From positions 13,082,001 to 13,146,000 of the forward strand of contig OZ059894.1 in the NCBI GenBank assembly GCA_964057225.1: DNA of 64,000 nt, in the 5' to 3' direction. This DNA is from Auanema rhodensis. Lineage: Eukaryota > Animalia > Nematoda. Both the position numbers and the translations under genes were made by a program. Shown here one piece after another: positions 15,001 through 38,300 of the stretch. Positions within the stretch are counted from its first letter, which is position 1. Each line of letters opens with the position of its first letter. A model generated the notes under the pieces. That model was given only the letters and a program-made list of their open reading frames with translations, was not told the DNA's origin and searched no databases.

Positions 15001-18000
15001 TCCATTTTCTTCATTTAATCACGTATTTTGAAACAATCTCATATTTTTACAATAGTTTTGAAACAATTCATTCGTTCATTGAGATTTGAAACATTAAAAA
15101 CGATCTTAAGTTGAATTTTCTGATACTAAAAAAATAAAACATGGAAATATTTTATAATTTTCCAATTCATTTTACTCCATTTTCTACATTTAATCACGTA
15201 TTTTGAAACAATCTCAAATTTTTACAATAGTTTTGAAACAATTCATTCGTTCATTAAGATTTTAAACAGTGAAAAAAAAAAGTTTGAATATTTTGAAACT
15301 CAAGAAATAAAACATGAAAATATTTTATAATTTTCCAATTCATTTTACTCCATTTCCTTCATTTAATCACGTATTTTGAAACAATCTCATATTTTTACAA
15401 TAGTTTTGAAACAATTCATTCGTTCATTAAGATTTTAAACAGTGAAAAAAAAAAGTTTGAATATTTTGATACTCAAGAAATAAAACATGAAAATATTTTA
15501 TAATATTCCAATTCATTTTACTCTATTTTCTTCATTTAATCACGTATTTTGAAACAATCTCATATTTTTACAATAGTTTTGAAACAATTTATTCGTTCAT
15601 TAAGATTTGAAACATTGAAAACGATCTTAATTTGAATTTTCTGATACTAAGAAAATAAAACATGGAAATATTTTATAATTTTCCAATTCATTTTACTCCA
15701 TTTTCTTCATTTAATCACGTATTTTGAAACAATCTCAAATTTTTACAATAGTTTTGAAACAATTCATTCGTTCTGTAAGATTTTAAACAGTGAAAAAAAA
15801 AAGTTTAAATATTTTGATACTCAAGAAATAAAACATGAAAATATTTTATAATTTTCCAATTCATTTTACTCCATTTTCTTCATTTAATCACGTATTTTGA
15901 AACAATCTCATATTTTTACAATAGTTTTGAAACAATTCATTCGTTCATTAAGATTTTAAACAGTGAAAAAAAAAAGTTTGAATATTTTGAAACTCAAGAA
16001 ATAAAACATGAAAATATTTTATAATTTTCCAATTCATTTTACTCCATTTTCTTCATTTAATCACGTATTTTGAAACAATCTCATATTTTTACAATAGTTT
16101 TGAAACAATTCATTCGTTCATTAAGATTTTAAACAGTGAAAAAAAAAAGTTTGAATATTTTGAAACTCAAGAAATAAAACATGAAAATATTTTATAATTT
16201 TCCAATTCATTTTACTCCATTTTCTTCATTTAATCACGTATTTTGAATTAATCTCATATTTTTACAATAGTTTTGAAACAATTCATTCGTTCATTAAGAT
16301 TTTAAACAGTGAAAAAAAAAAGTTTGAATATTTTGAAACTCAAGAAATAAAACATGAAAATATTTTATAATTTTCCAATTCATTTTACTCCATTTCCTTC
16401 ATTTAATCACGTATTTTGAAACAATCTCATATTTTTACAATAGTTTTGAAACAGTTCATTCGTTCATTAAGATTTTAAACAGTGAAAAAAAAAAGTTTGA
16501 ATATTTTGAAACTCAAGAAATAAAACATGAAAATATTTTATAATTTTCCAATTCATTTTACTCCATTTCCTTCATTTAATCACGTATTTTGAAACAATCT
16601 CAAATTTTTACAATAGTTTTGAAACAATTCATTCGTTCATTAAGATTTGAAACATTAAAAACGATCTTAATTTAAATTTTCTGATACTAAGAAAATAAAA
16701 CATGGAAATATTTTATAATTTTCCAATTCATTTTACTCCATTTTCTTCATTTAATCACGTATTTTGAAACAATCTCATATTTTTACAATAATTTCGAAAC
16801 AAATCATCCAGTTAATAATGTTTTTAACAGTAAAGAAGTTATAATTTCAAATATTTTGATACTCAAAAAATAAAACAGGAAAATATTTTATAATTTTCCA
16901 ATTCATTTTACTCCATTTTCTTCATTTAATCACGTATTTTGAATTAATCTCATTTTTTTACAATAGTTTTGAAACAATTCATTCGTTCATTAAGATTTTA
17001 AACAGTGAAAAAAAAAAGTTTGAATATTTTGAAACTCAAGAAATAAAACATGAAAATATTTTATAATTTTCCAATTCATTTTACTCCATTTCCTTCATTT
17101 AATCACGTATTTTGAAACAATCTCATATTTTTACAATAGTTTTGAAACAGTTCATTCGTTCATTAAGATTTTAAACAGTGAAAAAAAAAAGTTTGAATAT
17201 TTTGAAACTCAAGAAATAAAACATGAAAATATTTTATAATTTTCCAATTCATTTTACTCCATTTCCTTCATTTAATCACGTATTTTGAAACAATCTCAAA
17301 TTTTTACAATAGTTTTGAAACAATTCATTCGTTCATTAAGATTTGAAACATTAAAAACGATCTTAATTTGAATTTTCTGATACTAAGAAAATAAAACATG
17401 GAAATATTTTATAATTTTCCAATTCATTTTACTCCATTTTCTTCATTTAATCACGTATTTTGAAACAATCTCATATTTTTACAATAATTTCGAAACAAAT
17501 CATCCAGTTAATAATGTTTTTAACAGTAAAGAAGTTATAATTTCAAATATTTTGATACTCAAAAAATAAAACAGGAAAATATTTTATAATTTTCCAATTC
17601 ATTTTACTCCATTTTCTTCATTTAATCACGTATTTTGAAACAATCTCATATTTTTACAATAATTTCCAAACAAATCATCCAGTTAATAATGTTTTTAACA
17701 GTAAAAAAGATATAATTTTGAATATTTTGATACTCAAGAAATAAAACATGAAAATATTTTATAATTTTCCAATTCATTTTACTCCATTTTCTTCATTTAA
17801 TCACGTATTTTGAAACAATCTCATATTTTTACAATAGTTTTGAAACAATTCATTCGTTCATTAAGATTTGAAACATTAAAAACGATCTTAATTTGAATTT
17901 TCTGATACTAAGAAAATAAAACATGGAAATATTTTAAAATTTTCCAATTCATTTTACTCTATTTTCTTCATTTAATCATGTGTCTTGAAACAATCTCAAA

Positions 18001-21000
18001 TTTTTACAATAGTTTTGAAACAATTCATTCGTTCATTAAGATTTTAAACAGTGAAAAAAAAAGTTTGAATATTTTGATACTCAAGAAATAAAACATGAAA
18101 ATATTTTAAAATTTTCCAATTCATTTTACTCTATTTTCTTCATTTAATTATGTTTCTTGGAACAATTTTAAATTTTACAATAATTTCGAAATAAATAATC
18201 CAGTTAATAATGTTTTTAACAGTAAAGTAGATATAATTTTAATTTATTTGATACTCAAAAAATGAAACATGAAAATATTTTTTAATTTTCCAATTCATTT
18301 TACTCTTTTTTCTTCATTTAATCACGTATTTTGAAACATACTCATATTTTTACAATAATTTCGAAACAAATCATCCAGTTAATAATGTTTTTAACAGTAA
18401 AGAAGTTATAATTTCAAATATTTTGATACTCAAAAAATAAAACATGAAAATATTTTATAATTTTCCAATTCATTTTACTCTATTTTCTTCATTTGATCAC
18501 GTATTTTGAAACAATCTCATATTTTTACAATAGTTTTGAAACAATTCATTCGTTCATTGAGATTTGAAACATTAAAAACGATCTTAATTTGAATTTTCTG
18601 ATACTAAGAAAATAAAACATGGAAATATTTTATAATTTTCCAATTCATTTTACTCCATTTTCTTCATTTAATCACGTATTTTGAAACAATCTCATATTTT
18701 TACAATAGTTTTGAAACAATTCATTCGTTCATTAAGATTTGAAACATTAAAAACGATCTTAATTTGAATTTTCTGATACTAAGAAAATAAAACATGGAAA
18801 TATTTTAAAATTTTCCAATTCATTTTACTCTATTTTCTTCATTTAATTATGTTTCTTGGAACAATTTTAAATTTTACAATAATTTCGAAATAAATAATCC
18901 AGTTAATAATGTTTTTAACAGTAAAGTAGATATAATTTTAATTTATTTGATACTCAAAAAATGAAACATAAAAATATTTTATAATTTTCCAATTCATTTT
19001 ACTCTATTTTCTTCATTTAATCACGTATTTTGAAACAATCTCATATTTTTACAATAATTTCGAAACAAATCATCCAGTTAATAATGTTTTTAACAGTAAA
19101 GAAGTTATAATTTCAAATATTTTGATACTCAAAAAATAAAACATGAAAATATTTTATAATTTTCCAATTCATTTTACTCTATTTTCTTCATTTGATCACG
19201 TATTTTGAAACAATCTCATATTTTTACAATAGTTTTGAAACAATTCATTCGTTCATTGAGATTTGAAACATTAAAAACGATCTTAATTTGAATTTTCTGA
19301 TACTCAAAAAATAAAACATGAAAATATTTTATAATTTTCCAATTCATTTTACTCTATTTTCTTCATTTGATCACGTATTTTGAAACAATCTCATATTTTT
19401 ACAATAGTTTTGAAACAATTCATTCGTTCATTGAGATTTGAAACATTAAAAACGATCTTAATTTGAATTTTCTGATACTAAAAAAATAAAACATGGAAAT
19501 ATTTTATAGTTTTCCAATTCATTTTACTCCATTTTCTTCATTTAATCACGTATTTTGAAACAATCTCATATTTTTACAATAGTTTTGAAACAGTTCATTC
19601 GTTCATTAAGATTTTAAACAGTGAAAAAAAAAAGTTTGAATATTTTGAAACTCAAGAAATAAAACATGAAAATATTTTATAATTTTCCAATTCATTTTAC
19701 TCCATTTCCTTCATTTAATCACGTATTTTGAAACAATCTCAAATTTTTACAATAGTTTTGAAACAATTCATTCGTTCATTAAGATTTGAAACATTAAAAA
19801 CGATCTTAATTTGAATTTTCTGATACTAAGAAAATAAAACATGGAAATATTTTATAATTTTCCAATTCATTTTACTCCATTTTCTTCATTTAATCACGTA
19901 TTTTGAAACAATCTCATATTTTTACAATAATTTCGAAACAAATCATCCAGTTAATAATGTTTTTAACAGTAAAGAAGTTATAATTTCAAATATTTTGATA
20001 CTCAAAAAATAAAACAGGAAAATATTTTATAATTTTCCAATTCATTTTACTCCATTTTCTTCATTTAATCACGTATTTTGAAACAATCTCATATTTTTAC
20101 AATAATTTCCAAACAAATCATCCAGTTAATAATGTTTTTAACAGTAAAGAAGTTATAATTTCAAATATTTTGATACTCAAAAAAAAAAACATGAAAATAT
20201 TTTATAATTTTTCAATTCATTTTACTCTATTCTCTTCATTAAATCACGTATTTTGAAACAATCTCAAATTTTTACAATAGTTTTGAAACAATTCATTCGT
20301 TCATTAAGATTTTAAACAGTGAAAAAAAAAAGTTTGAATATTTTGAAACTCAAGAAATAAAACATGAAAATATTTTATAATTTTCCAATTCATTTTACTC
20401 CATTTTCTTCATTTAATCACGTATTTTGAAACAATCTCATATTTTTACAATAGTTTTGAAACAATTCATTCGTTCATTGAGATTTGAAACATTAAAAACG
20501 ATCTTAATTTGAATTTTCTGATACTAAGAAAATAAAACATGGAAATATTTTATAATTTTCCAATTCATTTTATTCCATTTTCTTCATTTAATCACGTATT
20601 TTGAAACAATCTCAAATTTTTACAATAGTTTTGAAACAATTCATTCGTTCATTAAGATTTTAAACAGTGAAAAAAAAAGTTTGAATATTTTGATACTCAA
20701 AAAATAAAACATGAAAATATTTTAAAATTTTCCAATTCATTTTACTCTATTTTCTTCATTTAATCATGTTTCTTGGAACAATTTTAAATTTTACAATAAT
20801 TTCGAAACAAATCATCCAGTTAATAATGTTTTTAACAGTAAAGTAGATATAATTTTAATTATTTTGATACTCAAAAAATAAAACATGAAAATATTTTATA
20901 ATTTTCCAATTCATTTTACTCTATTTTCTTCATTTAATCATGTTTCTTGGAACAATTTTAAATTTTTACAATAATTTCGAAACAAATCATCCAGTTAATA

Positions 21001-24000
21001 ATGTTTTTAACAGTAAAGAAGTTATAATTTCAAATATTTTGATACTCAAAAAAAAAAACATGAAAATATTTTATAATTTTTCAATTCATTTTACTCTATT
21101 TTCTTCATTAAATCACGTATTTTGAAACAATCTCAAATTTTTACAATAGTTTTGAAACAATTCATTCGTTCATTAAGATTTTAAACAGTGAAAAAAAAAA
21201 GTTTGAATATTTTGAAACTCAAGAAATAAAACATGAAAATATTTTATAATTTTCCAATTCATTTTACTCCATTTTCTTCATTTAATCACGTATTTTGAAA
21301 CAATCTCATATTTTTACAATAGTTTTGAAACAATTCATTCGTTCATTAAGATTTTAAACAGTGAAAAAAAAAAGTTTGAATATTTTGAAACTCAAGAAAT
21401 AAAACATGAAAATATTTTATAATTTTCCAATTCATTTTACTCCATTTTCTTCATTTAATCACGTATTTTGAAACAATCTCATATTTTTACAATAGTTTTG
21501 AAACAATTCATTCGTTCATTAAGATTTTAAACAGTGAAAAAAAAAAGTTTGAATATTTTGAAACTCAAGAAATAAAACATGAAAATATTTTATAATTTTC
21601 CAATTCATTTTACTCCATTTTCTTCATTTAATCACGTATTTTGAATTAATCTCATATTTTTACAATAGTTTTGAAACAATTCATTCGTTCATTAAGATTT
21701 TAAACAGTGAAAAAAAAAAGTTTGAATATTTTGAAACTCAAGAAATAAAACATGAAAATATTTTATAATTTTCCAATTCATTTTACTCCATTTCCTTCAT
21801 TTAATCACGTATTTTGAAACAATCTCATATTTTTACAATAGTTTTGAAACAGTTCATTCGTTCATTAAGATTTTAAACAGTGAAAAAAAAAAGTTTGAAT
21901 ATTTTGAAACTCAAGAAATAAAACATGAAAATATTTTATAATTTTCCAATTCATTTTACTCCATTTCCTTCATTTAATCACGTATTTTGAAACAATCTCA
22001 AATTTTTACAATAGTTTTGAAACAATTCATTCGTTCATTAAGATTTGAAACATTAAAAACGATCTTAATTTGAATTTTCTGATACTAAGAAAATAAAACA
22101 TGGAAATATTTTATAATTTTCCAATTCATTTTACTCCATTTTCTTCATTTAATCACGTATTTTGAAACAATCTCATATTTTTACAATAATTTCGAAACAA
22201 ATCATCCAGTTAATAATGTTTTTAACAGTAAAGAAGTTATAATTTCAAATATTTTGATACTCAAAAAATAAAACAGGAAAATATTTTATAATTTTCCAAT
22301 TCATTTTACTCCATTTTCTTCATTTAATCACGTATTTTGAAACAATCTCATATTTTTACAATAATTTCCAAACAAATCATCCAGTTAATAATGTTTTTAA
22401 CAGTAAAAAAGATATAATTTTGAATATTTTGATACTCAAGAAATAAAACATGAAAATATTTTATAATTTTCCAATTCATTTTACTCCATTTTCTTCATTT
22501 AATCACGTATTTTGAAACAATCTCATATTTTTACAATAGTTTTGAAACAATTCATTCGTTCATTAAGATTTGAAACATTAAAAACGATCTTAATTTGAAT
22601 TTTCTGATACTAAGAAAATAAAACATGGAAATATTTTAAAATTTTCCAATTCATTTTACTCTATTTTCTTCATTTAATCATGTGTCTTGAAACAATCTCA
22701 AATTTTTACAATAGTTTTGAAACAATTCATTCGTTCATTAAGATTTTAAACAGTGAAAAAAAAGTTTGAATATTTTGATACTCAAGAAATAAAACATGAA
22801 AATATTTTAAAATTTTCCAATTCATTTTACTCTATTTTCTTCATTTAATTATGTTTCTTGGAACAATTTTAAATTTTACAATAATTTCGAAATAAATAAT
22901 CCAGTTAATAATGTTTTTAACAGTAAAGTAGATATAATTTTAATTTATTTGATACTCAAAAAATGAAACATGAAAATATTTTATAATTTTCCAATTCATT
23001 TTACTCTTTTTTCTTCATTTAATCACGTATTTTGAAACATACTCATATTTTTACAATAATTTCGAAACAAATCATCCAGTTAATAATGTTTTTAACAGTA
23101 AAGAAGTTATAATTTCAAATATTTTGATACTCAAAAAATAAAACATGAAAATATTTTATAATTTTCCAATTCATTTTACTCTATTTTCTTCATTTGATCA
23201 CGTATTTTGAAACAATCTCATATTTTTACAATAGTTTTGAAACAATTCATTCGTTCATTGAGATTTGAAACATTAAAAACGATCTTAATTTGAATTTTCT
23301 GATACTAAGAAAATAAAACATGGAAATATTTTATAATTTTCCAATTCATTTTACTCCATTTTCTTCATTTAATCACGTATTTTGAAACAATCTCATATTT
23401 TTACAATAGTTTTGAAACAATTCATTCGTTCATTAAGATTTGAAACATTAAAAACGATCTTAATTTGAATTTTCTGATACTAAGAAAATAAAACATGGAA
23501 ATATTTTAAAATTTTCCAATTCATTTTACTCTATTTTCTTCATTTAATTATGTTTCTTGGAACAATTTTAAATTTTACAATAATTTCGAAATAAATAATC
23601 CAGTTAATAATGTTTTTAACAGTAAAGTAGATATAATTTTAATTTATTTGATACTCAAAAAATGAAACATGAAAATATTTTATAATTTTCCAATTCATTT
23701 TACTCTATTTTCTTCATTTAATCACGTATTTTGAAACAATCTCATATTTTTACAATAATTTCGAAACAAATCATCCAGTTAATAATGTTTTTAACAGTAA
23801 AGAAGTTATAATTTCAAATATTTTGATACTCAAAAAATAAAACATGAAAATATTTTATAATTTTCCAATTCATTTTACTCTATTTTCTTCATTTGATCAC
23901 GTATTTTGAAACAATCTCATATTTTTACAATAGTTTTGAAACAATTCATTCGTTCATTGAGATTTGAAACATTAAAAACGATCTTAATTTGAATTTTCTG

Positions 24001-24599
24001 ATACTAAGAAAATAAAACATGGAAATATTTTATAATTTTCCAATTCATTTTACTCCATTTTCTTCATTTAATCACGTATTTTGAAACAATCTCATATTTT
24101 TACAATAGTTTTGAAACAGTTCATTCGTTCATTAAGATTTTAAACAGTGAAAAAAAAAAGTTTGAATATTTTGAAACTCAAGAAATAAAACATGAAAATA
24201 TTTTATAATTTTCCAATTCATTTTACTCCATTTCCTTCATTTAATCACGTATTTTGAAACAATCTCATATTTTTACAATAATTTCGAAACAAATCATCCA
24301 GTTAATAATGTTTTTAACAGTAAAGAAGTTATAATTTCAAATATTTTGATACTCAAAAAATAAAACAGGAAAATATTTTATAATTTTCCAATTCATTTTA
24401 CTCCATTTCCTTCATTTAATCACGTATTTTGAAACAATCTCATATTTTTACAATAATTTCGAAACAAATCATCCAGTTAATAATGTTTTTAACAGTAAAG
24501 AAGTTATAATTTCAAATATTTTGATACTCAAAAAATAAAACATGAAAATATTTTATAATTTTCCAATTCATTTTACTCTATTTTCTTCATTTGATCACG

Positions 24600-25000
24600 T
24601 ATTTTGAAACAATCTCATATTTTTACAATAGTTTTGAAACAATTCATTCGTTCATTGAGATATTTTAAAATTTTCCAATTCATTTTACTCCATTTTCTTC
24701 ATTTAATCACGTATTTTGAAACAATCTCATATTTTTACAATAGTTTTGAAACAATTCATTCGTTCTGTAAGATTTTAAACAGTGAAAAAAAAAAGTTTGA
24801 ATATTTTGAAACTCAAGAAATAAAACATGAAAATATTTTAAAATTTTCCAATTCATTTTACTCCATTTTCTTCATTTAATCACGTATTTTGAAACAATCT
24901 CATATTTTACAAAAAACAATCTCATATTTTTACAATAGTTTTGAAACAATTCATTCGTTCATTGAGATATTTTAAAATTTTCCAATTCATTTTACTCCAT
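24600..25000 (+). repeat. Rearranged satellite junction: two ~60-bp-deleted monomers and a short duplication
   Basis: CATTGAGA|TATTTTAAAATTTTCC occurs at ~24660 and ~24967 (the monomer's second half is missing). CATATTTTACAAAAAACAATCTCATATTTTTAC at 24901-24933 restarts the monomer. Confidence 0.85.
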
Positions 25001-25754
25001 TTTCTTCATTTAATCACGTATTTTGAAACAATCTCATATTTTTACAATAGTTTTGAAACAATTCATTCGTTCATTAAGATTTTAAACAGTGAAAAAAAAA
25101 AGTTTGAATATTTTGAAACTCAAGAAATAAAACACGAAAATATTTTATAATTTTCCAATTCATTTTACTCCATTTTCTTCATTTAATCACGTATTTTGAA
25201 ACAATCTCAATTTTTTACAATAGTTTTGAAACAATTCATTCGTTCATTAAGATTTTAAACAGTGAAAAAAAAAAGTTTGAATATTTTGATACTAAAAAAA
25301 TAAAACATGAAAATATTTTAAAATTTTCCAATTCATTTTACTCTATTTTCTTCATTTAATCACGTATTTTGAAACAATCTCAAATTTTTACAATAGTTTT
25401 GAAACAATTCATTCGTTCATTGAGATTTTAAACAGTGAAAAAAAAAGTTTGAATATTTTGATACTCAAGAAATAAAACATGAAAATTTTTTATAATTTTC
25501 CAATTCATTTTACTCTATTTTCTTCATTTAATCATGTTTCTTGGAACAATTTTAAATTTTTACAATAATTTCGAAACAAATCATTCATTTAATAATGTTT
25601 TTAACAGTAAAGAAGATATAATTTTAAATATTTTGATACTCAAAAAATAAAACATGAAAATATTTTAAAATTTTCCAATTCATTTTACTCTATTTTCTTC
25701 ATTTAATCATGTTTCTTGGAATAATTTTAAATTTTACAATAATTTCAAAACAAA

Positions 25755-25758
25755 TCAT
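25755..25758. other. Target-site duplication TCAT, left copy
   Basis: ...CAAATCAT|TG... and ...CA|TCATCCAG... The empty site CAAATCATCCAG is seen in sister monomers (e.g. 33222-33233). Confidence 0.88.
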
Positions 25759-26166
25759 TGTGATGGTTTTGGCGTACTGCGAATGTAATTTTGAAAGTTT
25801 GACTTTAGAAAAGCCCTTTATTAAAAGAAGAAACTCAAAAAATTAAACAGAACCAATACAAATATTAAAACTAAATGCTGTAACTCAATAATGAGCTATT
25901 ATAAGAAAAAAAAAGTGTGTGTGTATTACGACCCCTAGTTATAACTTGTAAAATAATAAAAAGAAGAAAAGGAACAAAAAGAATAGGTTTCCTTTAAAGC
26001 AACGACGATTCGGACCTTCAGAGAGCAGTCACAGTCTAGATAACTGACTATAGAGCTACAGGCATCCCTTATATAGTATAGAAAGAGCGGGAAAACACCT
26101 GGTCAACGAGATCAAATATATATAAAAAGTGGAATCGATATACTAGTCGTATATTTAACTACAACA
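25759..26166 (-). repeat. 3' LTR (408 bp)
   Basis: Direct repeat of 31949-32356 (offset 6190 bp). It begins 11 nt after the ORF stop codon. Confidence 0.96.
25817..25822 (-). terminator. Putative polyadenylation signal AATAAA in the 3' LTR
   Basis: TTTATT on + equals AATAAA on the sense strand, ~58 nt before the LTR end and downstream of the TATA/Inr. This fits U3-R-U5 order. Confidence 0.6.
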
Positions 26167-26176
26167 TGGGGGGGGG
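26167..26176 (-). other. C9-A tract occupying the position of the polypurine tract
   Basis: The sense strand reads TAA-A-CCCCCCCCC-A|TGTTGTAG (+ strand TGGGGGGGGG at 26167-26176). The sequence is certain; its function is unknown. Confidence 0.6.
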
Positions 26177-26177
26177 T

Positions 26178-29100
26178 TTACATATGAAGGCGTCCCTGTC
26201 TTCTCGTTTTGGCCATTTCTTGACGTGATGAAAAATTGCGTTTTCGAGTCTTCGGAGACGGTTCCTCAGCTGACTTCCTTTCGATTGTGATATGGTAAGA
26301 ACTGTCCACCAGCTTCACAAGGTGTATAGATAGTGTCCATAGGAAAATCTCGGCTTCTTCTGCGTTCAAATAGGTCTTCTTTACCAGCCCCAGGCATCCC
26401 TGCACATCGAGTAAACGAATCGCTCCCAAGTCTAGATCCCCGATGGTGTCGATCTTAGCCTCAACGCTATCGGCTTCAAGCCACATTTTTAGAACCCGAA
26501 CCTCCTGTTCGATCTCCTCTACGACTTCCTCGTAGCCCACCGTTGTAACGGGCGGGTATACCACCACTATCCTTCTGGTGTGATGTTTTTCAGTAAATTC
26601 TCGTAACATCTTAACCGGTAGCCAATTTTTGATATCGGCTCGAACCATCTTTGGTAAGGCGATAACTAGGTTTGGGACATCTCCCCAATCTTCTCCTAAA
26701 GCGTCTGAGACACCTCTACGTACATTTCCTATCCGTACCGCTCCACCTTTGATGTGAAAAACTCCAGGCTCCTTTACTATCATCATTGAAGGAGGCAGGA
26801 TAAGTAAATTATCTTTCTTTGCCGACAACTTCTCAACCGACTTTACATTTCCTCGTATCCTGTTTAACAACCGTTCTTGTAGCATACTTTCAGTTGCACT
26901 GAAATGAGTTGAGTTAACATATACTTGTGACACAACCGCATTTGCGTCTTTACGAGGCCTTCCTCTCGTACGTCTGCCTTTCCCTATACACTTAGGCTCA
27001 CCCATACTCTTATCTACAGGTATTAATAGGTCATGCTGCACGCGCATCTCATTCCTATTTCGACTCTCTTGTATTGTAGCCGAAGTAGCCCCCGCATCTA
27101 CGACGGTACATGGACCTTTCATATTATGCATTAATTTACGATGGGGATCTGCATTATTTCCTAACTTCAGATACACCGTATCTCCCGTTTTTGGTAGTTT
27201 GTCCATATTGACTTTTTTTACCGTGTCATATCTCTTTTTCATTCTTTCTGCTTGCTTTACAAGGTTATCCTTAGCTAAACCTTGTGCATAAGCGAGTACT
27301 TCTCTTAACTCACTTATATAATCTTCATACTGTGTCAAATGTGACATAGGCTCATACTTTCCCATAATCTCGGGTGGAGCTCTACCGTACACTAACTCAT
27401 AAGGTGTAAACCCAGTACTTTCATGACTGGATGTATTGTATGCGAATACAACGAAAGGCAGAAGCCTATCCCACTCTGCTGGGGTGACTGTCTGCTTTTT
27501 TAACATCCTCTGTAGTGTTTGTTGCGCTCTTTCAACACTTCCGTTCATGCGCGAGTTATACCCCTTGGTCTTGGCTAGTTCAATATCGAACTGCCTACTT
27601 AACTCTTCCAATAGCGAGTTGTCAAATTCCGTACCTTGATCTGACAAGATTTTCCTAGGCCACCATCCACACCTGGCTACCCATTCATATGCTATAACGT
27701 CGCATACTTCTCTTGCGGATTTAGTCTTTAGCGCATATGCACCCATCCACTTGGAAAAGTGATCTACTATCGTTAGAACATACTCATGTCCTCTCGTAGT
27801 CTTTCCTAACTCTAACAGGTCTATCGCTATTAATTCAAATGGCGAACTTGTTAAAATTGGCTTTAGTGGCGGAACTTGACTACCTTTCATATTTGTTAGC
27901 TTGCATTCTATGCATTTTTTGTGATACTCTCTCACATCTTTCTCTAACCCTTTCCACCAATAGTGTTCTTTCAATCTTTTTACAGTACGTGGAATACCGA
28001 AATGTCCTGCCCACTTCCCCCCGTGATATTGTTCTACGAGTTTGGGTCTTACGGTGGTTGGCGCCACTTTACGCGTATTACCGTAATCATCAATACGGTA
28101 CAAAAACTCGTTGACAATTTCATAATTAGGAATATTCCTACCACTACGAATGTCATCGATTATTTCTTTCATTTCACTGTCCGTTTCAAGCTCTTGTAAC
28201 CATTTCTCTTTTTCTATGATCTGTGCTATTACGGTTTCATTTATAATATGTGATAGTTCTATGCCATCAGCATCTTGCACTGGCCCTCTCGATAAAGCGT
28301 CTGCTATCTTGTTAGTGGTACCTTTAACATATTCTATGCGTATTCTATACCCTCGCAGTTCGATGGCCCACCTCATTACTCTAGCGGACGTATTTGTCCC
28401 TGAGAATAGTGCTAACAAGGGCTGGTGGTCAGTCCTTACCACACATTCACACCCGTATATAATAGGATGGAATCTTTTGACTGCGTGTATTACTCCTAGA
28501 CCTTCCAGGTCTGTTACTGTGTAATTTCGCTCATGTTTCGATAAACTTTTCGATGCAAATGCAATCGGATGTAGAAAACCGTCCTTTGCTTTTTGCGTTA
28601 ACACAGCGCCTGTTCCTATTCTGGAAGCATCGCTATAAATTATGAATGGCGCTTCACCATTCTTCGCCTTTTCTATATCAGGCTGTGCTAGTACTGGCGA
28701 TTTGGCTATGCTATCTCTCAAAAATTGAAAAGCCTCTTTTTCTTTTATTTCCCATACCCATGGTACTGTTTCTTTCGTTAATTCGTATAGTGGTCTAGCC
28801 TTACTGGCAAAACCTGCTACAAACTTTCTATAGAACGTGCACATACCTATAAATGTGCGCAGCTCATCTCTATTTTTTGGCACTGGGAAATCGGTGACTG
28901 CTCTAGTTTTCTCGGGGTTCACTCGAAGTCCCTCTCCATCAACTATATAACCTAAGTATTCTACACTAGGTTGCAGCAATCTGCATTTTTGCGGTTTTAA
29001 TCGCAATCCTGCTTTTTTAAGTACCTCCAGTACACAACGCAAGACTTCTATATGTCTTTCTGCGCTTTCAGTGGCGATCAGTATGTCATCTAGATATACT

Positions 29101-31775
29101 TGTATCTCTGAACCCACCAAACCTGTCGGTTCTAAGACCGCGTCCATAACCCGCTGAAATATAGCCGGGGAATTAATCATGCCAAACGGCAATACGCAAA
29201 ATTGATAAGCGCCCTTGCTCGTGGAAAATGCCGTTTTTTCTCTATCTTTCTGATTTAAGGCTATTTGATAAAATCCGCTCGCGAGATCTAGCGACGAAAA
29301 TATCTTTTTCCCTGCTAAAGCCTGTAAGGCTTGCTCCATGCTGGGCAAGGGGTAAGCGTCTACCTTTGTAAGCTTGTTCAACTCACGAAAATCGACACAC
29401 ATGCGAATGGTGCCATCTTTCTTTTTCACTAACACTAATGGACTGCTCCAAGCAGAGGATGATCTTTCAATTACCCCATGCTTCTCAAGTCCTGTGATCA
29501 ACTCATCTAGCTCTTTACGTAACCCTAATGGTACCGTACGCATTCGTTGTTTTACGGGTTTCGCACTACCGGTGTCTATAAATGCACACCCTTCTGCACT
29601 TGGCTTAAGCTCTGCTTCGGATACTGCAAACGCGTCCGAAAATTCCTCAACAAGGGAGCTCAATTCCTGCTCTTGTTGGCTTTCTACCTTAGACTCTGTT
29701 ATCATGTTTTTCAACATTCCAAGTCTTTCATGCTCTGGTATTTCACTAATACCTCCTGATTCCAATAACGCCTTATATGCTGTAACGTTTGCTATTGTCC
29801 CTACAGCTACGCTATCTTTATCAATCCAAGTACCTACTTGGGTTCCCCGTGGCCAAACTAATGGTACTGGGGTTCTGTTTGTAACTGGGACAGTCCAACT
29901 GTCCTGTTCAAATTCTGTCACTGATGGTATATATGGGTTAGAAGCCCACAATACTACTTGACTATGCCTAGGTTTGCTGATTTCAATCAGTTTAGTCTCC
30001 CCTGGCAACACCAGTGTTCTATGAATCAATTTCACAGCGTTTTCACTAGGTGGCTCAACCTGTATACTCAAACCTAAGGGTTCCCAGATGTTGCGACCTA
30101 ACAGCATCTTACACCCTAGATGTTGGACTATTATTACTCTTGCATCCGTGCTGCGCCCGTTTTTCTTGAGCGTAATATGAGCATCTATCTGGCCCACTAC
30201 TTTCATACGCTCTTGCGATGCAGTCACTAGCTCTGTGGTGCATGGTTCTATCTTTCGCATGATATCGGTGAATGCTGAGCTTTTTACACTAGCTTCCTTC
30301 AGCAATTCCACGTTGATTAAGGTGACCATTGCACCAGAATCCACTAATGCGGACGTGTCAAGCCCAAAAACCACTACTTGCTCGTGGGGTTGGTCTCCTA
30401 ACACGATCCCACTTTTCTGAGCCACTACTTTGTTGACTTTTTTTGGGCAAGCGGACTTAAAATGTCCTGCCTCTCCACACTGAAAGCATTTCCGCTCCAC
30501 TTGCTTAGGCTTTTCAACCTCTAAGTTGGGTTTGCTGTTTCTACCGGCATTCCGGGGTCTATCTATGTGGCGCGATCTACTATCACCCACACCTCTCTTC
30601 CCTGCCTTTTTGTGCTCAGCCTCAATCACTTCGGCCATGTCTCTGGCTTCAATATATGTCCTTCCAGGCGTAGCGCGATTCATGGCTCTACGAACCATAC
30701 CTGAGTTTGGCCAGCGATCTATCACTCGACATAACTCATTCGCCTTAATTTGGGCTAGCTGTAGCCGCGAAAAATCAGGATACGCTCTGGGTACCCACTG
30801 ATCTAAGACCTCACATATGGCGCTTATGCTCATATAAGAAGTTAACCTGGCCAGTTCATCCTGGGCCTTATTTTTCACACTCTCGGAGCCTCCCTCCAGC
30901 TCGCTTCTCATGATTACGATTGTTCCCTCATAATCCTCACTTCTAACACATTCATCTACACTCTCCCATACAGAAAGCGCTCTATGTTCTAAGTGTTCCG
31001 GCAGCAACGCTGCACGTTGTTTATTATTAAGTATTGCGGATGGGAAGCGTGCCTCGAAAGATTTCACGAAACGCGAAAAATGGTCCCCTGACCCACTATA
31101 TGGCTTTAGCTTCGGCATTACTTGGCTTGTAATCCAATTGGAAAACAAGCCCTCACTCATACGTCCATGAGTTAATTCAGACGCACCTATGGTCAGTCCG
31201 TTTGCCTGCCGCCTCTCTTGCTGCTGTTGTCCTGCTCTGTTCATTTGTTCCTGAACAACATAAGGGTAACTGGGATTTTCCCAAGCGTTTCTACCTGGCT
31301 CAACCGTCGGACCGCTTGTACATGACCCTACACCTGCCTCAACATGCGGTGTCGTACTTCTACCCTGAACAAGATTTGGGTTAGTGCTCGAGAACTGAAC
31401 CCGACGCGCCTCCTCCAGCTCAACCTCGAGCCTTTTAGCCTTCTCCAAGGCATTCCAGAGATCTTTCAACGAACTACACCCAAAAGCCGTGAGGACTGGG
31501 CGCATGTCTTCGGGGGTTGAGGTCTGTACCATCCAACACTCCCGAATCCGGCGTATGCTTTCGTCCATAGCCTTCGTGACGTCACTCGGCGGAATGTACG
31601 TATTCTTACGCGCCTTGCATGCACACTCTGCATATCTGGCTAGCTCGGCCTTCATGCCGGTGAAGAGGCGGTCGAGCATATCGAACCTACTAACCTCCAG
31701 TACCACATCGTCTTCTTCGATGCCCTCTTCAACGAGGTCTTCGTACTGCTTGTTCATCACGTCTTCTCCTGACAT
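26178..31775 (-). CDS. gag-pol: Gag-Pol polyprotein, 1865 aa, single uninterrupted frame
   Basis: Motifs in order: capsid-like LKPYSGSGDHFSRFVKSFE; zinc knuckle CFQCGEAGHFKSAC (30447-30488); aspartic protease LVDSGA (DSG 30333-30341); RT SSPLVLVKKKDGTIRMCVDFRELN, LPFG, YLDD (29085-29096); RNase H YSDAS...DLE...TDH...ADALSR; integrase H-x6-H...CIEC, AIDL, SDQG, VER; GPY/F-like KGPC (GPC 27108-27116); then a ~260-aa extension. Confidence 0.97.
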   Translation of the reverse strand: MSGEDVMNKQYEDLVEEGIEEDDVVLEVSRFDMLDRLFTGMKAELARYAECACKARKNTYIPPSDVTKAMDESIRRIRECWMVQTSTPEDMRPVLTAFGCSSLKDLWNALEKAKRLEVELEEARRVQFSSTNPNLVQGRSTTPHVEAGVGSCTSGPTVEPGRNAWENPSYPYVVQEQMNRAGQQQQERRQANGLTIGASELTHGRMSEGLFSNWITSQVMPKLKPYSGSGDHFSRFVKSFEARFPSAILNNKQRAALLPEHLEHRALSVWESVDECVRSEDYEGTIVIMRSELEGGSESVKNKAQDELARLTSYMSISAICEVLDQWVPRAYPDFSRLQLAQIKANELCRVIDRWPNSGMVRRAMNRATPGRTYIEARDMAEVIEAEHKKAGKRGVGDSRSRHIDRPRNAGRNSKPNLEVEKPKQVERKCFQCGEAGHFKSACPKKVNKVVAQKSGIVLGDQPHEQVVVFGLDTSALVDSGAMVTLINVELLKEASVKSSAFTDIMRKIEPCTTELVTASQERMKVVGQIDAHITLKKNGRSTDARVIIVQHLGCKMLLGRNIWEPLGLSIQVEPPSENAVKLIHRTLVLPGETKLIEISKPRHSQVVLWASNPYIPSVTEFEQDSWTVPVTNRTPVPLVWPRGTQVGTWIDKDSVAVGTIANVTAYKALLESGGISEIPEHERLGMLKNMITESKVESQQEQELSSLVEEFSDAFAVSEAELKPSAEGCAFIDTGSAKPVKQRMRTVPLGLRKELDELITGLEKHGVIERSSSAWSSPLVLVKKKDGTIRMCVDFRELNKLTKVDAYPLPSMEQALQALAGKKIFSSLDLASGFYQIALNQKDREKTAFSTSKGAYQFCVLPFGMINSPAIFQRVMDAVLEPTGLVGSEIQVYLDDILIATESAERHIEVLRCVLEVLKKAGLRLKPQKCRLLQPSVEYLGYIVDGEGLRVNPEKTRAVTDFPVPKNRDELRTFIGMCTFYRKFVAGFASKARPLYELTKETVPWVWEIKEKEAFQFLRDSIAKSPVLAQPDIEKAKNGEAPFIIYSDASRIGTGAVLTQKAKDGFLHPIAFASKSLSKHERNYTVTDLEGLGVIHAVKRFHPIIYGCECVVRTDHQPLLALFSGTNTSARVMRWAIELRGYRIRIEYVKGTTNKIADALSRGPVQDADGIELSHIINETVIAQIIEKEKWLQELETDSEMKEIIDDIRSGRNIPNYEIVNEFLYRIDDYGNTRKVAPTTVRPKLVEQYHGGKWAGHFGIPRTVKRLKEHYWWKGLEKDVREYHKKCIECKLTNMKGSQVPPLKPILTSSPFELIAIDLLELGKTTRGHEYVLTIVDHFSKWMGAYALKTKSAREVCDVIAYEWVARCGWWPRKILSDQGTEFDNSLLEELSRQFDIELAKTKGYNSRMNGSVERAQQTLQRMLKKQTVTPAEWDRLLPFVVFAYNTSSHESTGFTPYELVYGRAPPEIMGKYEPMSHLTQYEDYISELREVLAYAQGLAKDNLVKQAERMKKRYDTVKKVNMDKLPKTGDTVYLKLGNNADPHRKLMHNMKGPCTVVDAGATSATIQESRNRNEMRVQHDLLIPVDKSMGEPKCIGKGRRTRGRPRKDANAVVSQVYVNSTHFSATESMLQERLLNRIRGNVKSVEKLSAKKDNLLILPPSMMIVKEPGVFHIKGGAVRIGNVRRGVSDALGEDWGDVPNLVIALPKMVRADIKNWLPVKMLREFTEKHHTRRIVVVYPPVTTVGYEEVVEEIEQEVRVLKMWLEADSVEAKIDTIGDLDLGAIRLLDVQGCLGLVKKTYLNAEEAEIFLWTLSIHLVKLVDSSYHITIERKSAEEPSPKTRKRNFSSRQEMAKTRRQGRLHM

Positions 31776-31935
31776 GGTATCTCTCTGGACTACGGTCTAC
31801 AATAGGTACCGTAACAAAATTCCAAGAAAAAAAATTTGAAATGATTCAAAGAGAACAAGAGAACACAATAGTAACAAGATAACTATAGGGTATAAACTTC
31901 GTAACTTTCACTATATCTTTTTTTTTTTTTAGTTA

Positions 31936-31948
31936 GGCTCGGCCCCCA
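31936..31948 (-). other. Primer-binding site TGGGGGCCGAGCC, likely tRNA-Pro
   Basis: Starts with TGG directly after the 5' LTR terminal CA. It is complementary to a tRNA ending ...GGCUCGGCCCCCA; TGGGGGC is the typical tRNA-Pro PBS start. Confidence 0.82.
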
Positions 31949-32356
31949 TGTGATGGTTTTGGCGTACTGCGAATGTAATTTTGAAAGTTTGACTTTAGAA
32001 AAGCCCTTTATTAAAAGAAGAAACTCAAAAAATTAAACAGAACCAATACAAATATTAAAACTAAATGCTGTAACTCAATAATGAGCTATTATAAGAAAAA
32101 AAAAGTGTGTGTGTATTACGACCCCTAGTTATAACTTGTAAAATAATAAAAAGAAGAAAAGGAACAAAAAGAATAGGTTTCCTTTAAAGCAACGACGATT
32201 CGGACCTTCAGAGAGCAGTCACAGTCTAGATAACTGACTATAGAGCTACAGGCATCCCTTATATAGTATAGAAAGAGCGGGAAAACACCTGGTCAACGAG
32301 ATCAAATATATATAAAAAGTGGAATCGATATACTAGTCGTATATTTAACTACAACA
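31949..32356 (-). repeat. 5' LTR (408 bp)
   Basis: On + it runs TGTGATGGTT...AACTACAACA with an imperfect terminal inverted repeat (7/10). It matches 25759-26166 block for block by eye, lies upstream of the minus-strand ORF and abuts the PBS. Confidence 0.96.
32232..32284 (-). promoter_or_regulatory. Putative LTR core promoter: E2F-like TTTCCCGC, TATA box TATATAAG, initiator TCAGTT
   Basis: On the minus strand: TTTCCCGC (32284-32277), TATATAAG (32265-32258) and TCAGTT (32237-32232). The Inr A at 32235 is 30 nt from the first T of the TATA box, which is canonical spacing. Confidence 0.65.
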
Positions 32357-32360
32357 TCAT
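32357..32360. other. Target-site duplication TCAT, right copy
   Basis: Follows the terminal CA directly and duplicates 25755-25758. Confidence 0.88.
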
Positions 32361-35300
32361 CCAGTTAATAATGTTTTTAACAGTAAAGTAGATATAATTT
32401 TAATTATTTTGATACTCAAAAAATAAAACATGAAAATATTTTATAATTTTCCAATTCATTTTACTCTATTTTCTTCATTTAATCATGTTTCTTGGAACAA
32501 TTTTAAATTTTTACAATAAATTCGAAACAAATCATCCAGTTAATGATGTTTTTAACAGTAAAGAAGTTATAATTTCAAATATTTTGATACTCAAAAAATA
32601 AAACATGAAAATATTTTATAATTTTCCAATTCATTTTACTCTATTTTCTTCATTTAATCACGTATTTTGAAACAATCTCAATTTTTTACAATAGTTTTGA
32701 AACAATTCATTCGTTCATTAAGATTTTAAACAGTGAAAAAAAAAAGTTTGAATATTTTGATACTAAAAAAATAAAACATGAAAATATTTTAAAATTTTCC
32801 AATTCATTTTACTCTATTTTCTTCATTTAATCACGTATTTTGAAACAATCTCAAATTTTTACAATAGTTTTGAAACAATTCATTCGTTCATTGAGATTTT
32901 AAACAGTGAAAAAAAAAGTTTGAATATTTTGATACTCAAGAAATAAAACATGAAAATTTTTTATAATTTTCCAATTCATTTTACTCTATTTTCTTCATTT
33001 AATCATGTTTCTTGGAACAATTTTAAATTTTTACAATAATTTCGAAACAAATCATTCATTTAATAATGTTTTTAACAGTAAAGAAGATATAATTTTAAAT
33101 ATTTTGATACTCAAAAAATAAAACATGAAAATATTTTAAAATTTTCCAATTCATTTTACTCTATTTTCTTCATTTAATCATGTTTCTTGGAATAATTTTA
33201 AATTTTACAATAATTTCAAAACAAATCATCCAGTTAATAATGTTTTTAACAGTAAAGTAGATATAATTTTAATTATTTTGATACTCAAAAAATAAAACAT
33301 GAAAATATTTTATAATTTTCCAATTCATTTTACTCTATTTTCTTCATTTAATCATGTTTCTTGGAACAATTTTAAATTTTTACAATAATTTCGAAACAAA
33401 TCATCCAGTTAATAATGTTTTTAACAGTAAAGAAGTAATAATTTCAAATATTTTGATACTCAAAAAATAAAACATGAAAATATTTTATAATTTTCCAATT
33501 CATTTTACTCTATTTTCTTCATTCAATCACGTATTTTGAAGCAATCTCAAATTTTTACAATAGTTTTGAAACAATTCATTCGTTCATTAAGATTTTAAAC
33601 AGTGAAAAAAAAAAGTTTGAATATTTTGAAACTCAAGAAATAAAACATGAAAATATTTTATAATTTTCCAATTCATTTTACTCCATTTTCTTCATTTAAT
33701 CACGTATTTTGAAACAATCTCATATTTTTACAATAGTTTTGAAACAATTCATTCGTTCATTGAAATTTGAAACATTAAAAACGATCTTAATTTGAATTTT
33801 CTGATACTAAAAAAATAAAACATGGAAATATTTCATAATTTTCCAATTCATTTTACTCCATTTTCTTCATTTAATCACGTATTTTGAAACAATCTCATAT
33901 TTTTACAATAGTTTTGAAACAATTCATTCGTTCTGTAAGATTTTAAACAGTGAAAAAAATAAGTTTAAATATTTTGATACTCAAGAAATAAAACATGAAA
34001 ATATTTTATAATTTTCCAATTCATTTTACTCCATTTTCTTCATTTAATCACGTATTTTGAAACAATCTCAAATTTTTACAATAGTTTTGAAACAATTCAT
34101 TCGTTCATTAAGATTTTAAACAGTGAAAAAAAAAAGTTTGAATATTTTGATACTAAAAAAATAAAACATGAAAATTTTTTATAATTTTCCATTTCATTTT
34201 ACTCCATTTTCTTCATTTAATCACGTATTTTGAAACAATCTCAAATTTTTACAATAGTTTTGAAACAATTCATTCGTTCTGTAAGATTTTAAACAGTGAA
34301 AAAAATAAGTTTAAATATTTTGATACTCAAGAAATAAAACATGAAAATATTTTAAAATTTTCCATTTCATTTTACTCTATTTTCTTCATTTAATCATGTT
34401 TCTTGGAACAATTTTAAATTTTTACAATAATTTCGAAACAAATCATTCGTTTAATAATGTTTTTAACAGTAAAGAAGATATAATTTTAAATATTTTGATA
34501 CTCAAAAAATAAAACATGAAAATATTTTAAAATTTTCCAATTCATTTTACTCTATTTTCTTCATTTAATCATGTTTCTTGGAACAATTTTAAATTTTACA
34601 ATAATTTCAAAACAAATCATCCAGTTAATAATGTTTTTAACAGTGAAGTAGATATAATTTTAATTATTTTGATACTCAAAAAATAAAACATGAAAATATT
34701 TTATAATTTTCCAATTCATTTTACTCTATTTTCTTCATTTAATCATGTTTCTTGGAACAATTTTAAATTTTTACAATAATTTCGAAACAAATCATCCAGT
34801 TAATAATGTTTTTAACAGTAAAGAAGTAATAATTTCAAATATTTTGATACTCAAAAAATAAAACATGAAAATTTTTTATAATTTTCCAATTCATTTTACT
34901 CTATTTTCTTCATTTAATCATGTTTCTTGGAACAATTTTAAATTTTTACAATAATTTCGAAACAAATCATTCATTTAATAATGTTTTTAACAGTAAAGAA
35001 GATATAATTTTAAATATTTTGATACTCAAAAAATAAAACATGAAAATATTTTAAAATTTTCCAATTCATTTTACTCTATTTTCTTCATTTAATCATGTTT
35101 CTTGGAATAATTTTAAATTTTACAATAATTTCAAAACAAATCATCCAGTTAATAATGTTTTTAACAGTAAAGTAGATATAATTTTAATTATTTTGATACT
35201 CAAAAAATAAAACATGAAAATATTTTATAATTTTCCAATTCATTTTACTCTATTTTCTTCATTTAATCATGTTTCTTGGAACAATTTTAAATTTTTACAA

Positions 35301-38300
35301 TAATTTCGAAACAAATCATCCAGTTAATAATGTTTTTAACAGTAAAGAAGTAATAATTTCAAATATTTTGATACTCAAAAAATAAAACATGAAAATATTT
35401 TATAATTTTCCAATTCATTTTACTCTATTTTCTTCATTTAATCACGTATTTTGAAGCAATCTCAAATTTTTACAATAGTTTTGAAACAATTCATTCGTTC
35501 ATTAAGATTTTAAACAGTGAAAAAAAAAAGTTTGAATATTTTGAAACTCAAGAAATAAAACATGAAAATATTTTATAATTTTCCAATTCATTTTACTCCA
35601 TTTTCTTCATTTAATCACGTATTTTGAAACAATCTCATATTTTTACAATAGTTTTGAAACAATTCATTCGTTCATTGAAATTTGAAACATTAAAAACGAT
35701 CTTAATTTGAATTTTCTGATACTAAAAAAATAAAACATGGAAATATTTCATAATTTTCCAATTCATTTTACTCCATTTTCTTCATTTAATCACGTATTTT
35801 GAAACAATCTCATATTTTTACAATAGTTTTGAAACAATTCATTCGTTCTGTAAGATTTTAAACAGTGAAAAAAATAAGTTTAAATATTTTGATACTCAAG
35901 AAATAAAACATGAAAATATTTTATAATTTTCCAATTCATTTTACTCCATTTTCTTCATTTAATCACGTATTTTGAAACAATCTCAAATTTTTACAATAGT
36001 TTTGAAACAATTCATTCGTTCATTAAGATTTTAAACAGTGAAAAAAAAAAGTTTGAATATTTTGATACTAAAAAAATAAAACATGAAAATTTTTTATAAT
36101 TTTCCATTTCATTTTACTCCATTTTCTTCATTTAATCACGTATTTTGAAACAATCTCAAATTTTTACAATAGTTTTGAAACAATTCATTCGTTCTGTAAG
36201 ATTTTAAACAGTGAAAAAAATAAGTTTAAATATTTTGATACTCAAGAAATAAAACATGAAAATATTTTAAAATTTTCCATTTCATTTTACTCTATTTTCT
36301 TCATTTAATCACGTATTTTGAAACAATCTCATATTTTTACAATAGTTTTGAAACAATTCATTCGTTCATTAAGATTTTAAACAGTGAAAAAAAAAGTTTG
36401 AATATTTTGATACTCAAGAAATAAAACATGAAAATTTTTTATAATTTTCCAATTCATTTTACTCTATTTTCTTCATTTAATCATGTTTCTTGGAACAATT
36501 TTAAATTTTTACAATAATTTCGAAACAAATCATTCATTTAATAATGTTTTTAACAGTAAAGAAGATATAATTTTAAATATTTTGATACTCAAAAAATAAA
36601 ACATGAAAATATTTTAAAATTTTCCAATTCATTTTACTCTATTTTCTTCATTTAATCATGTTTCTTGGAACAATTTTAAATTTTACAATAATTTCAAAAC
36701 AAATCATCCAGTTAATAATGTTTTTAACAGTGAAGTAGATATAATTTTAATTATTTTGATACTCAAAAAATAAAACATGAAAATATTTTATAATTTTCCA
36801 ATTCATTTTACTCTATTTTCTTCATTTAATCATGTTTCTTGGAACAATTTTAAATTTTTACAATAATTTCGAAACAAATCATCCAGTTAATAATGTTTTT
36901 AACAGTAAAGAAGTTATAATTTCAAATATTTTGATACTCAAAAAATAAAACATGAAAATATTTTATAATTTTCCAATTCATTTTACTCTATTTTCTTCAT
37001 TTAATCACGTATTTTGAAACAATCTCAAATTTTTACAATAGTTTTGAAACAATTCATTCGTTCATTAAGATTTTAAACAGTGAAAAAAAAAAGTTTGAAT
37101 ATTTTGAAACTCAAGAAATAAAACATGAAAATATTTTATAATTTTCCAATTCATTTTACTCCATTTTCTTCATTTAATCACGTATTTTGAAACAATCTCA
37201 TATTTTTACAATAGTTTTGAAACAATTCATTCGTTCATTGAGATTTGAAACATTAAAAACGATCTTAATTTGAATTTTCTGATACTAAAAAAATAAAACA
37301 CGAAAATATTTTATAATTTTCCATTTCATTTTACTCCATTTTCTTCATTTAATCACGTATTTTGAAACAATCTCAAATTTTTACAATAGTTTTGAAACAA
37401 TTCATTCGTTCTGTAAGATTTTAAACAGTGAAAAAAATAAGTTTAAATATTTTGATACTCAAGAAATAAAACATGAAAATATTTTAAAATTTTCCATTTC
37501 ATTTTACTCTATTTTCTTCATTTAATCACGTATTTTGAAACAATCTCATATTTTTACAATAGTTTTGAAACAATTCATTCGTTCATTAAGATTTTAAACA
37601 GTGAAAAAAAAAGTTTGAATATTTTGATACTCAAGAAATAAAACATGAAAATTTTTTATAATTTTCCAATTCATTTTACTCTATTTTCTTCATTTAATCA
37701 TGTTTCTTGGAACAATCTTAAATTTTTACAATAATTTCGAAACAAATCATTCATTTAATAATGTTTTTAACAGTAAAGAAGATATAATTTTAAATATTTT
37801 GATACTCAAAAAATAAAACATGAAAATATTTTAAAATTTTCCAATTCATTTTACTCTATTTTCTTCATTTAATCATGTTTCTTGGAACAATTTTAAATTT
37901 TGCAATAATTTCAAAACAAATCATCCAGTTAATAATGTTTTTAACAGTGAAGTAGATATAATTTTAATTATTTTGATACTCAAAAAATAAAACATGAAAA
38001 TATTTTATAATTTTCCAATTCATTTTACTCTATTTTCTTCATTTAATCATGTTTCTTGGAACAATTTTAAATTTTTACAATAATTTCGAAACAAATCATC
38101 CAGTTAATAATGTTTTTAACAGTAAAGAAGTTATAATTTCAAATATTTTGATACTCAAAAAATAAAACATGAAAATATTTTATAATTTTCCAATTCATTT
38201 TACTCTATTTTCTTCATTTAATCACGTATTTTGAAACAATCTCAAATTTTTACAATAGTTTTGAAACAATTCATTCGTTCATTAAGATTTTAAACAGTGA

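What the first reader, a model, noticed from the sequence alone, without database searches (positions are those of the whole stretch)
26167..26180. No polypurine tract: a C9-A tract mirrors the PBS, suggesting non-canonical (possibly tRNA-primed) plus-strand synthesis
Seen: where LTR retroelements have a sense-strand purine run next to U3, this intact element has CCCCCCCCCA|TG. The internal region is therefore bounded by an inverted TGGGGG...CCCCCA, each copy abutting an LTR with no spacer. Established: plus-strand DNA is normally primed by an RNase H-resistant PPT whose 3' end defines the LTR edge. Inference: the minus-strand cDNA here reads 5'-CA|TGGGGG, which could bind the same tRNA-Pro 3' end (...CCCCCA) used at the PBS and start synthesis exactly at the LTR TG. 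Alternatives are a C-rich RNA primer, or intramolecular pairing of C9-A with the PBS. Identical LTRs, an open ORF and a clean TSD argue that the element replicated recently with this sequence. Only 6 bp would pair with the tRNA, so the mechanism is speculative.
Basis: partly seen in the sequence, partly recalled or inferred. Interest (0 to 1): 0.85.

Follow-up and report, generated by a model that had tools for sequence, protein, structure and literature searches.

The report
Young retrotransposon without a polypurine tract
A freshly inserted, intact Cer1-type retrotransposon has a run of nine C's where all seven relatives examined carry the G-rich purine tract that primes second-strand DNA synthesis; with only one copy available, I cannot tell whether this is a working alternative or a one-off defect.

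Summary
The window is a ~174-bp AT-rich satellite array interrupted once, at 25759-32356 (minus strand), by a 6,598-bp Ty3/gypsy element. It has two 408-bp LTRs with no differences, a 4-bp target duplication, and one open 1,865-aa gag-pol frame with all catalytic motifs. The primer binding site abuts the 5' LTR and is the tRNA-Pro site that two papers call characteristic of the Cer1 family.

The 12 bases before the 3' LTR are AA-C9-A, 3 purines of 12. Seven relatives from Caenorhabditis, Ancylostoma, Haemonchus, Meloidogyne and one unnamed sample have 9-12 purines of 12 there, with G runs of up to 13. So the C tract is not standard for this lineage.

No sister copy turned up in any collection I could search, so I cannot tell an inherited tract from a private one.

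It rests on 6 base pairs, and the bases upstream of those are more C, not tRNA-like sequence.

Estimates:
- inherited tract with non-canonical priming: about 0.45, of which tRNA priming is about 0.15
- change private to this copy: about 0.3
- sequence or assembly error: about 0.1

Interest is moderate to high but unresolved.

The parts
25759..32356 (-). Complete LTR retrotransposon, 6,598 bp, the only interruption of the satellite array
31949..32356 (-). 5' LTR, 408 bp, TG...CA ends
   Evidence: 0 mismatches to the 3' LTR
25759..26166 (-). 3' LTR, 408 bp
32357..32360 (-). Target-site duplication, upstream copy (4 bp)
   Evidence: compared with uninterrupted monomers
25755..25758 (-). Target-site duplication, downstream copy (4 bp)
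31936..31948 (-). Primer binding site; 13 nt shared with the Ancylostoma relative L002. The first 9 nt are the motif published as the Cer1-family tRNA-Pro PBS.
31918..31930 (-). A13 run 5 nt downstream of the PBS
26178..31775 (-). Single gag-pol ORF, 1,865 aa plus stop; no stops or frameshifts
30441..30494 (-). Gag zinc knuckle (CCHC)
30090..30365 (-). Aspartic protease region (DSG present)
28941..29429 (-). Reverse transcriptase (YLDD present)
28347..28754 (-). RNase H
27576..28061 (-). Integrase: zinc-binding HHCC plus catalytic core with D, D-35-E
26181..27575 (-). 465-aa C-terminal tail with no Pfam domain; one AT-hook-like motif at 26940-26972
26193..26210 (-). Purine-rich stretch (16 of 18) inside the coding region, ending 26 nt before the LTR
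26167..26176 (-). C9-A tract in the position of the polypurine tract, abutting the 3' LTR
1..25758 (+). Satellite array, ~173-175-bp units, left of the element
32357..64000 (+). Satellite array, right of the element

Best explanation
What it is (shown): an intact, very recently inserted member of the Cer1 family of Ty3/gypsy LTR retrotransposons, probably in a nematode genome. The site next to its 3' LTR, where relatives keep a short G-rich purine tract, holds a C9-A tract instead. How it most likely works (inferred): the tract was already in the genomic RNA from which this copy was made, so this lineage completes plus-strand synthesis without a purine tract. Two primers are conceivable, and I cannot rank them with confidence. 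(a) A second packaged tRNA-Pro anneals by its last 6 nt to the T-G run on minus-strand DNA and is extended from the first LTR base. It is then removed by RNase H in the same way as the minus-strand primer. (b) RNase H spares a C-rich RNA oligomer in the rC:dG hybrid, and reverse transcriptase extends it.
For: Anatomy and youth. Cer1-family membership: protein matches; published PBS criterion. The tract sits exactly where 7 of 7 relatives have their purine run, and it keeps the same CA|TG junction as the three strongylid relatives. A complex multi-base difference is much more likely to be seen if inherited than if it arose in the short history of this one copy, which has 0 differences in 816 LTR bases (inference). 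For (a): CCCCCA and TGGGGG are each unique in the element and sit at the two LTR edges. Every step uses an activity the element already needs (established knowledge of retroviral replication). The duplex estimate is -15.9 kcal/mol, against -31 at the true PBS (RNA parameters, approximate).
Against: Only one copy was seen, and no sister copy was found anywhere, so inheritance is not shown. No published case of a pyrimidine tract serving as plus-strand primer turned up; the review found allows only single pyrimidines within a purine tract (PMC3185511). Six base pairs is shorter than any primer site I know of (own knowledge). Upstream of the 6 nt there is only more C, not tRNA-like sequence. The same complementarity would let the finished minus strand's own 3' end fold back on this site, which would be unproductive (inference).
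Confidence: 0.45

Rival explanations
1. Private change. The parent had an ordinary G-rich tract like its relatives. The C run arose in this copy alone, either in the reverse-transcription cycle that made it or after insertion. The copy looks intact but has lost its plus-strand primer site.
For: All 7 relatives are purine-rich at this position, and one has a G13 run, so the ordinary state in the clade is clear. The run length (9) is within the range of the relatives' G runs. The purine-tract rule is otherwise near-universal (PMC3185511). A first-stage scan picks out oddities, so rare one-off events are enriched among its findings (inference).
Against: It needs a rare multi-base event confined to one homopolymer, in a copy so young that its LTRs show 0 differences in 816 bases and its 5.6-kb frame is unbroken. 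I know of no ordinary replication or reverse-transcription error that produces it (own knowledge).
Confidence: 0.3
2. Sequence or assembly error at a homopolymer inside a long satellite array.
For: The region is a repeat-rich, long-read-type assembly context, and homopolymers are error-prone (own knowledge).
Against: Known homopolymer errors change the length of a run, not its base (own knowledge). The flanking sequence, frame, stop codon and LTR edge are all coherent.
Confidence: 0.1
3. Plus strands start at the purine-rich stretch 26193-26210, and the extra bases are trimmed before or during integration.
For: The stretch has 16 purines of 18 and loosely resembles the relatives' tracts.
Against: The 5' LTR carries none of the intervening bases. 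The purine richness is explained by Lys/Arg/Glu codons of the protein tail. Similar or longer purine runs occur 18 times in the element. Integrases normally remove about 2 nt (own knowledge).
Confidence: 0.07

Closest known systems
Cer1 family of Caenorhabditis (Ty3/gypsy, Metaviridae)
   Same: Same domain order. Protein match to the C. elegans entry Q17329, which I take for Cer1 gag-pol, at E=1e-187. Single long gag-pol frame with a long tail after integrase. The published tRNA-Pro PBS motif sits directly next to the 5' LTR. 4-bp TSDs in the Caenorhabditis relatives L001 and L008.
   Different: Only 32-35% protein identity. L001 and L008 have G7-A and a 13-nt all-purine run at the 3' LTR edge, against C9-A here. 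I did not fetch the Cer1 locus itself (see referred steps).
Unnamed Cer1-like elements of strongylid nematodes (L002 and L012 from Ancylostoma duodenale, L011 from Haemonchus contortus)
   Same: The closest pol proteins, at 44-47% identity. Same PBS start, the same or a similar LTR start (TGT...), a CA|TG junction and 4-bp TSDs.
   Different: Their last 12 nt before the LTR have 9-11 purines, with G4 to G13 runs; the window has 3 of 12 and a C9 run.
Purine tracts with a single pyrimidine (HIV-2, Mason-Pfizer monkey virus), as cited in the review PMC3185511
   Same: They show that the all-purine rule is 'not inviolable'.
   Different: They have one pyrimidine within a purine run, not a tract made of pyrimidines. 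I know these only from the review and fetched no sequence.
Self-priming LTR elements of the Tf1 type (own knowledge)
   Same: They use an unusual primer based on complementarity within the element.
   Different: That mechanism concerns the minus strand and needs a copy of the PBS complement near the 5' end of the transcript. Here the LTR holds no such copy: CCCCCA occurs only at the 3' junction.

Membership tests
Ty3/gypsy LTR retrotransposon | Two LTRs in direct orientation with TG...CA ends, flanked by a short target duplication | tested here: met
   408-bp LTRs with 0 mismatches and a 4-bp TSD
Ty3/gypsy LTR retrotransposon | Domain order gag (CCHC) - protease - RT - RNase H - integrase | tested here: met
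   Pfam matches in that order; catalytic motifs present
Ty3/gypsy LTR retrotransposon | Purine-rich tract directly upstream of the 3' LTR | tested here: not met
   3 purines in the last 12 nt and a C9 run; 9-12 of 12 in 7 relatives
Cer1 family (criteria of PMC10309623) | Significant similarity to the Cer1 POL domain | tested here: met
   The C. elegans entry Q17329 (P0011) was returned at E=1.1e-187; the best hits are nematode
Cer1 family (criteria of PMC10309623) | Flanked by direct repeats longer than 100 bp | tested here: met
   408-bp LTRs
Cer1 family (criteria of PMC10309623) | [quoted passage not shown] | tested here: met
   The motif starts at 31948, directly after the LTR's CA. The host's tRNA-Pro gene itself could not be examined: no tRNA gene is in the window or the loci
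Tf1-type self-priming elements | A stretch near the transcript's 5' end complementary to the PBS | tested here: not met
   No match of 6 nt or more to the PBS complement anywhere in the LTR
Known structured RNA families (Rfam) | Match at the gathering score anywhere in the element | tested here: not met
   0 matches in 25600-32500

The most novel reading that the evidence does not exclude
One host tRNA primes both DNA strands. In a family whose PBS begins with T-G5, a C run ending in A next to the 3' LTR makes a 6-nt mini-PBS on minus-strand DNA. A second tRNA-Pro could then start the plus strand at the first LTR base, and both LTR edges would be set by removal of the same primer. That would make a polypurine tract dispensable.
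Probability: 0.15. Interest if true: 0.85.

Novelty: new variant of a known kind. Interest (0 to 1): 0.55.

Why it matters
Plus-strand priming from an RNase H-resistant purine tract is treated as a near-universal rule for retroviruses and LTR retrotransposons, and annotation tools rely on it. A lineage that spreads with a pyrimidine tract at that site would show the rule can be bypassed and would point to a second way of setting the LTR edge. If the tract is instead private to this copy, the case is a caution: identical LTRs, an open frame and a clean duplication do not prove that every cis-acting site of a copy is functional.

Tried and rejected
**Sister copies: none found.**
- Exact-protein look-up found nothing.
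- Full-length protein search: best 44% identity.
- Pol-only search: best 47-51%.
- The 465-aa tail against 1.84 billion representatives: best 36%.
- A 24-nt LTR-start pattern was absent from the metagenome and genome contigs.
- A protein-guided metagenome scan gave only 33% relatives with a different PBS (L005-L007), which I dropped.

**Look-ups that led nowhere.**
- P0001 and P0121 are not on record.
- L009 and L010 come from an unidentified assembly with 208-Mb and 72-Mb chromosomes. Their gene models are chimeric and they lack the Cer1 PBS motif. I do not take them for human and dropped them after one check.

**Literature.**
- Searches for pyrimidine-tract primers or missing purine tracts found nothing relevant.
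- Ganko 2001 and Britten 1995 are not held.

**Other checks.**
- No tRNA genes are in the window or the loci, so the tRNA 3' end was inferred as the complement of the PBS.
- No Rfam family matches.
- RNA pairing between the two junctions is -19.2 kcal/mol, and 12 of 500 shuffles did as well. This is suggestive only, and part of it is forced by the inverted LTR ends.
- Fold-back self-priming by the minus strand's own 3' end was rejected because its product would not match the integrated structure (inference).

Full report
**1. What is in the window**

Almost all 64 kb is one satellite with units of about 173-175 bp, in one orientation, at 22% G+C. The only interruption is 25759-32356. It holds two 408-bp direct repeats with no mismatch and TG...CA ends. 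A 4-bp duplication flanks them, and 79 uninterrupted monomers carry that tetramer only once at the same spot. Between the repeats, on the minus strand, runs one open frame of 1,865 aa.

Pfam places a zinc knuckle, protease, reverse transcriptase, RNase H and integrase along it in the Ty3/gypsy order. The CCHC, DSG, YLDD, HHCC and D,D-35-E motifs are all present, and there are no stops or frameshifts.

**2. The observation**

Read on the minus strand, the frame stops at 26180-26178. Then come one A, nine C (26176-26168) and one A (26167), and the 3' LTR begins with TG at 26166. At the other end the 5' LTR's CA is followed directly by T-G5.

The C run is the only G or C homopolymer of 7 or more in the window. 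CCCCCA and TGGGGG each occur once in the element, at the two LTR edges, against 0.42 expected.

**3. Which family**

The best protein matches are nematode:
- Ancylostoma ceylanicum and A. duodenale, Caenorhabditis species and Meloidogyne.
- The C. elegans entry Q17329, which I take for Cer1 gag-pol.
- With pol alone, A. duodenale and Haemonchus contortus at 47%.

Two papers state that the 9-nt motif found here next to the 5' LTR is complementary to the 3' end of tRNA-Pro and is characteristic of the Cer1 family (PMC3315495; PMC10309623). All three membership criteria of the second paper are met.

**4. Relatives at the same junction**

I fetched seven full relatives with both LTRs and 4-bp duplications and tabulated them as they stand.

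| Element | Source | Purines in last 12 nt before the 3' LTR | G or purine run |
|---|---|---|---|
| L001 | Caenorhabditis sp. 36 | 9 | G7 then A |
| L002 | A. duodenale | 9 | two short G runs, then CA |
| L003 | unnamed ENA sample | 9 | G3 |
| L004 | M. enterolobii | 11 | G3 |
| L008 | C. brenneri | 12 | all-purine, no long G run |
| L011 | H. contortus | 11 | two G runs (G4, G3), then CA |
| L012 | A. duodenale, second family | 11 | G13 then CA |
| Window | this element | 3 | C9 |

The window keeps the CA|TG junction of the three strongylid relatives. So a purine tract is the norm in this clade, and the C tract is an exception at the same position.

**5. Inherited or private**

This is the crux, and I could not settle it. 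No sister copy exists in any collection I could search. The host genome seems absent from them.

The tract in a new copy is copied from the parent's RNA (established knowledge). So identical LTRs and an open frame make inheritance likely, unless a rare multi-base event struck this one young copy. I know of no ordinary error that changes the base of a whole homopolymer, and that weighs against both a private change and an assembly error. Against inheritance stands the near-universality of purine tracts; the review found concedes only single pyrimidines (PMC3185511).

**6. Mechanism, if inherited**

The tRNA model fits the geometry. On minus-strand DNA the site reads T followed by G9. The last 6 nt of the inferred tRNA pair there, and extension would begin at the first LTR base. 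The estimated duplex energy is about half that at the true PBS.

There are three weaknesses:
- The pairing is only six base pairs.
- There is no tRNA-like sequence further upstream.
- It may compete with unproductive fold-back of the minus strand's own 3' end.

An RNase H-spared C-rich RNA primer is equally open. Priming from the purine-rich stretch at 26193-26210 is unlikely, because the 5' LTR carries none of the intervening bases and that purine richness follows from Lys/Arg codons.

**7. Verdict**

The anomaly is real and stands out against seven relatives, but it rests on a single copy. My estimates:
- inherited tract with non-canonical priming: 0.45, of which tRNA priming is 0.15
- private change: 0.3
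- error: 0.1
- upstream priming: 0.07

If inherited, it is a new variant of a known kind.

**8. Conduct**

Slips:
- I have not repeated it here, and nothing was deleted.

Noticed in passing
window 1-25758 and 32357-64000: More than 57 kb of one AT-rich (22% G+C) satellite with ~173-175-bp units, all in one orientation. Some monomers are 97-100% identical at regular distances, which suggests a higher-order repeat.
   Followed up: partly
window 26940-26972 (minus), inside the tail 26181-27575: The 465-aa tail after integrase has no Pfam domain. It contains one AT-hook-like core with basic flanks (Pfam AT_hook E=0.2, below cut-off). It might tether integration to the AT-rich satellite.
   Followed up: partly
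window 31918-31930 (minus); L001 about 6776-6784: An A13 run lies 5 nt after the PBS. The Caenorhabditis relative L001 has a T9 run right after its PBS. The meaning is unknown and it may be chance.
   Followed up: no
window 26165-26168; L002, L011 and L012 3' junctions: The window and the three strongylid relatives all read CA|TG at the internal/3' LTR junction. This suggests a shared two-base terminal overhang on the unintegrated DNA (an inference).
   Followed up: partly
L012 about 11362-11374: A second Ancylostoma duodenale family has a G13 homopolymer as its purine tract, the longest in the set.
   Followed up: yes
L004 5001-11693: The Meloidogyne enterolobii relative is about 14.9 kb long, and its product carries a Monjiviricetes fusion-protein domain (PF24664). 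Several Aphelenchoides avenae hits are named 'gagpol and env'. This hints at envelope-like captures in the clade.
   Followed up: no
all eight elements: Every element examined has a 4-bp target duplication.
   Followed up: yes
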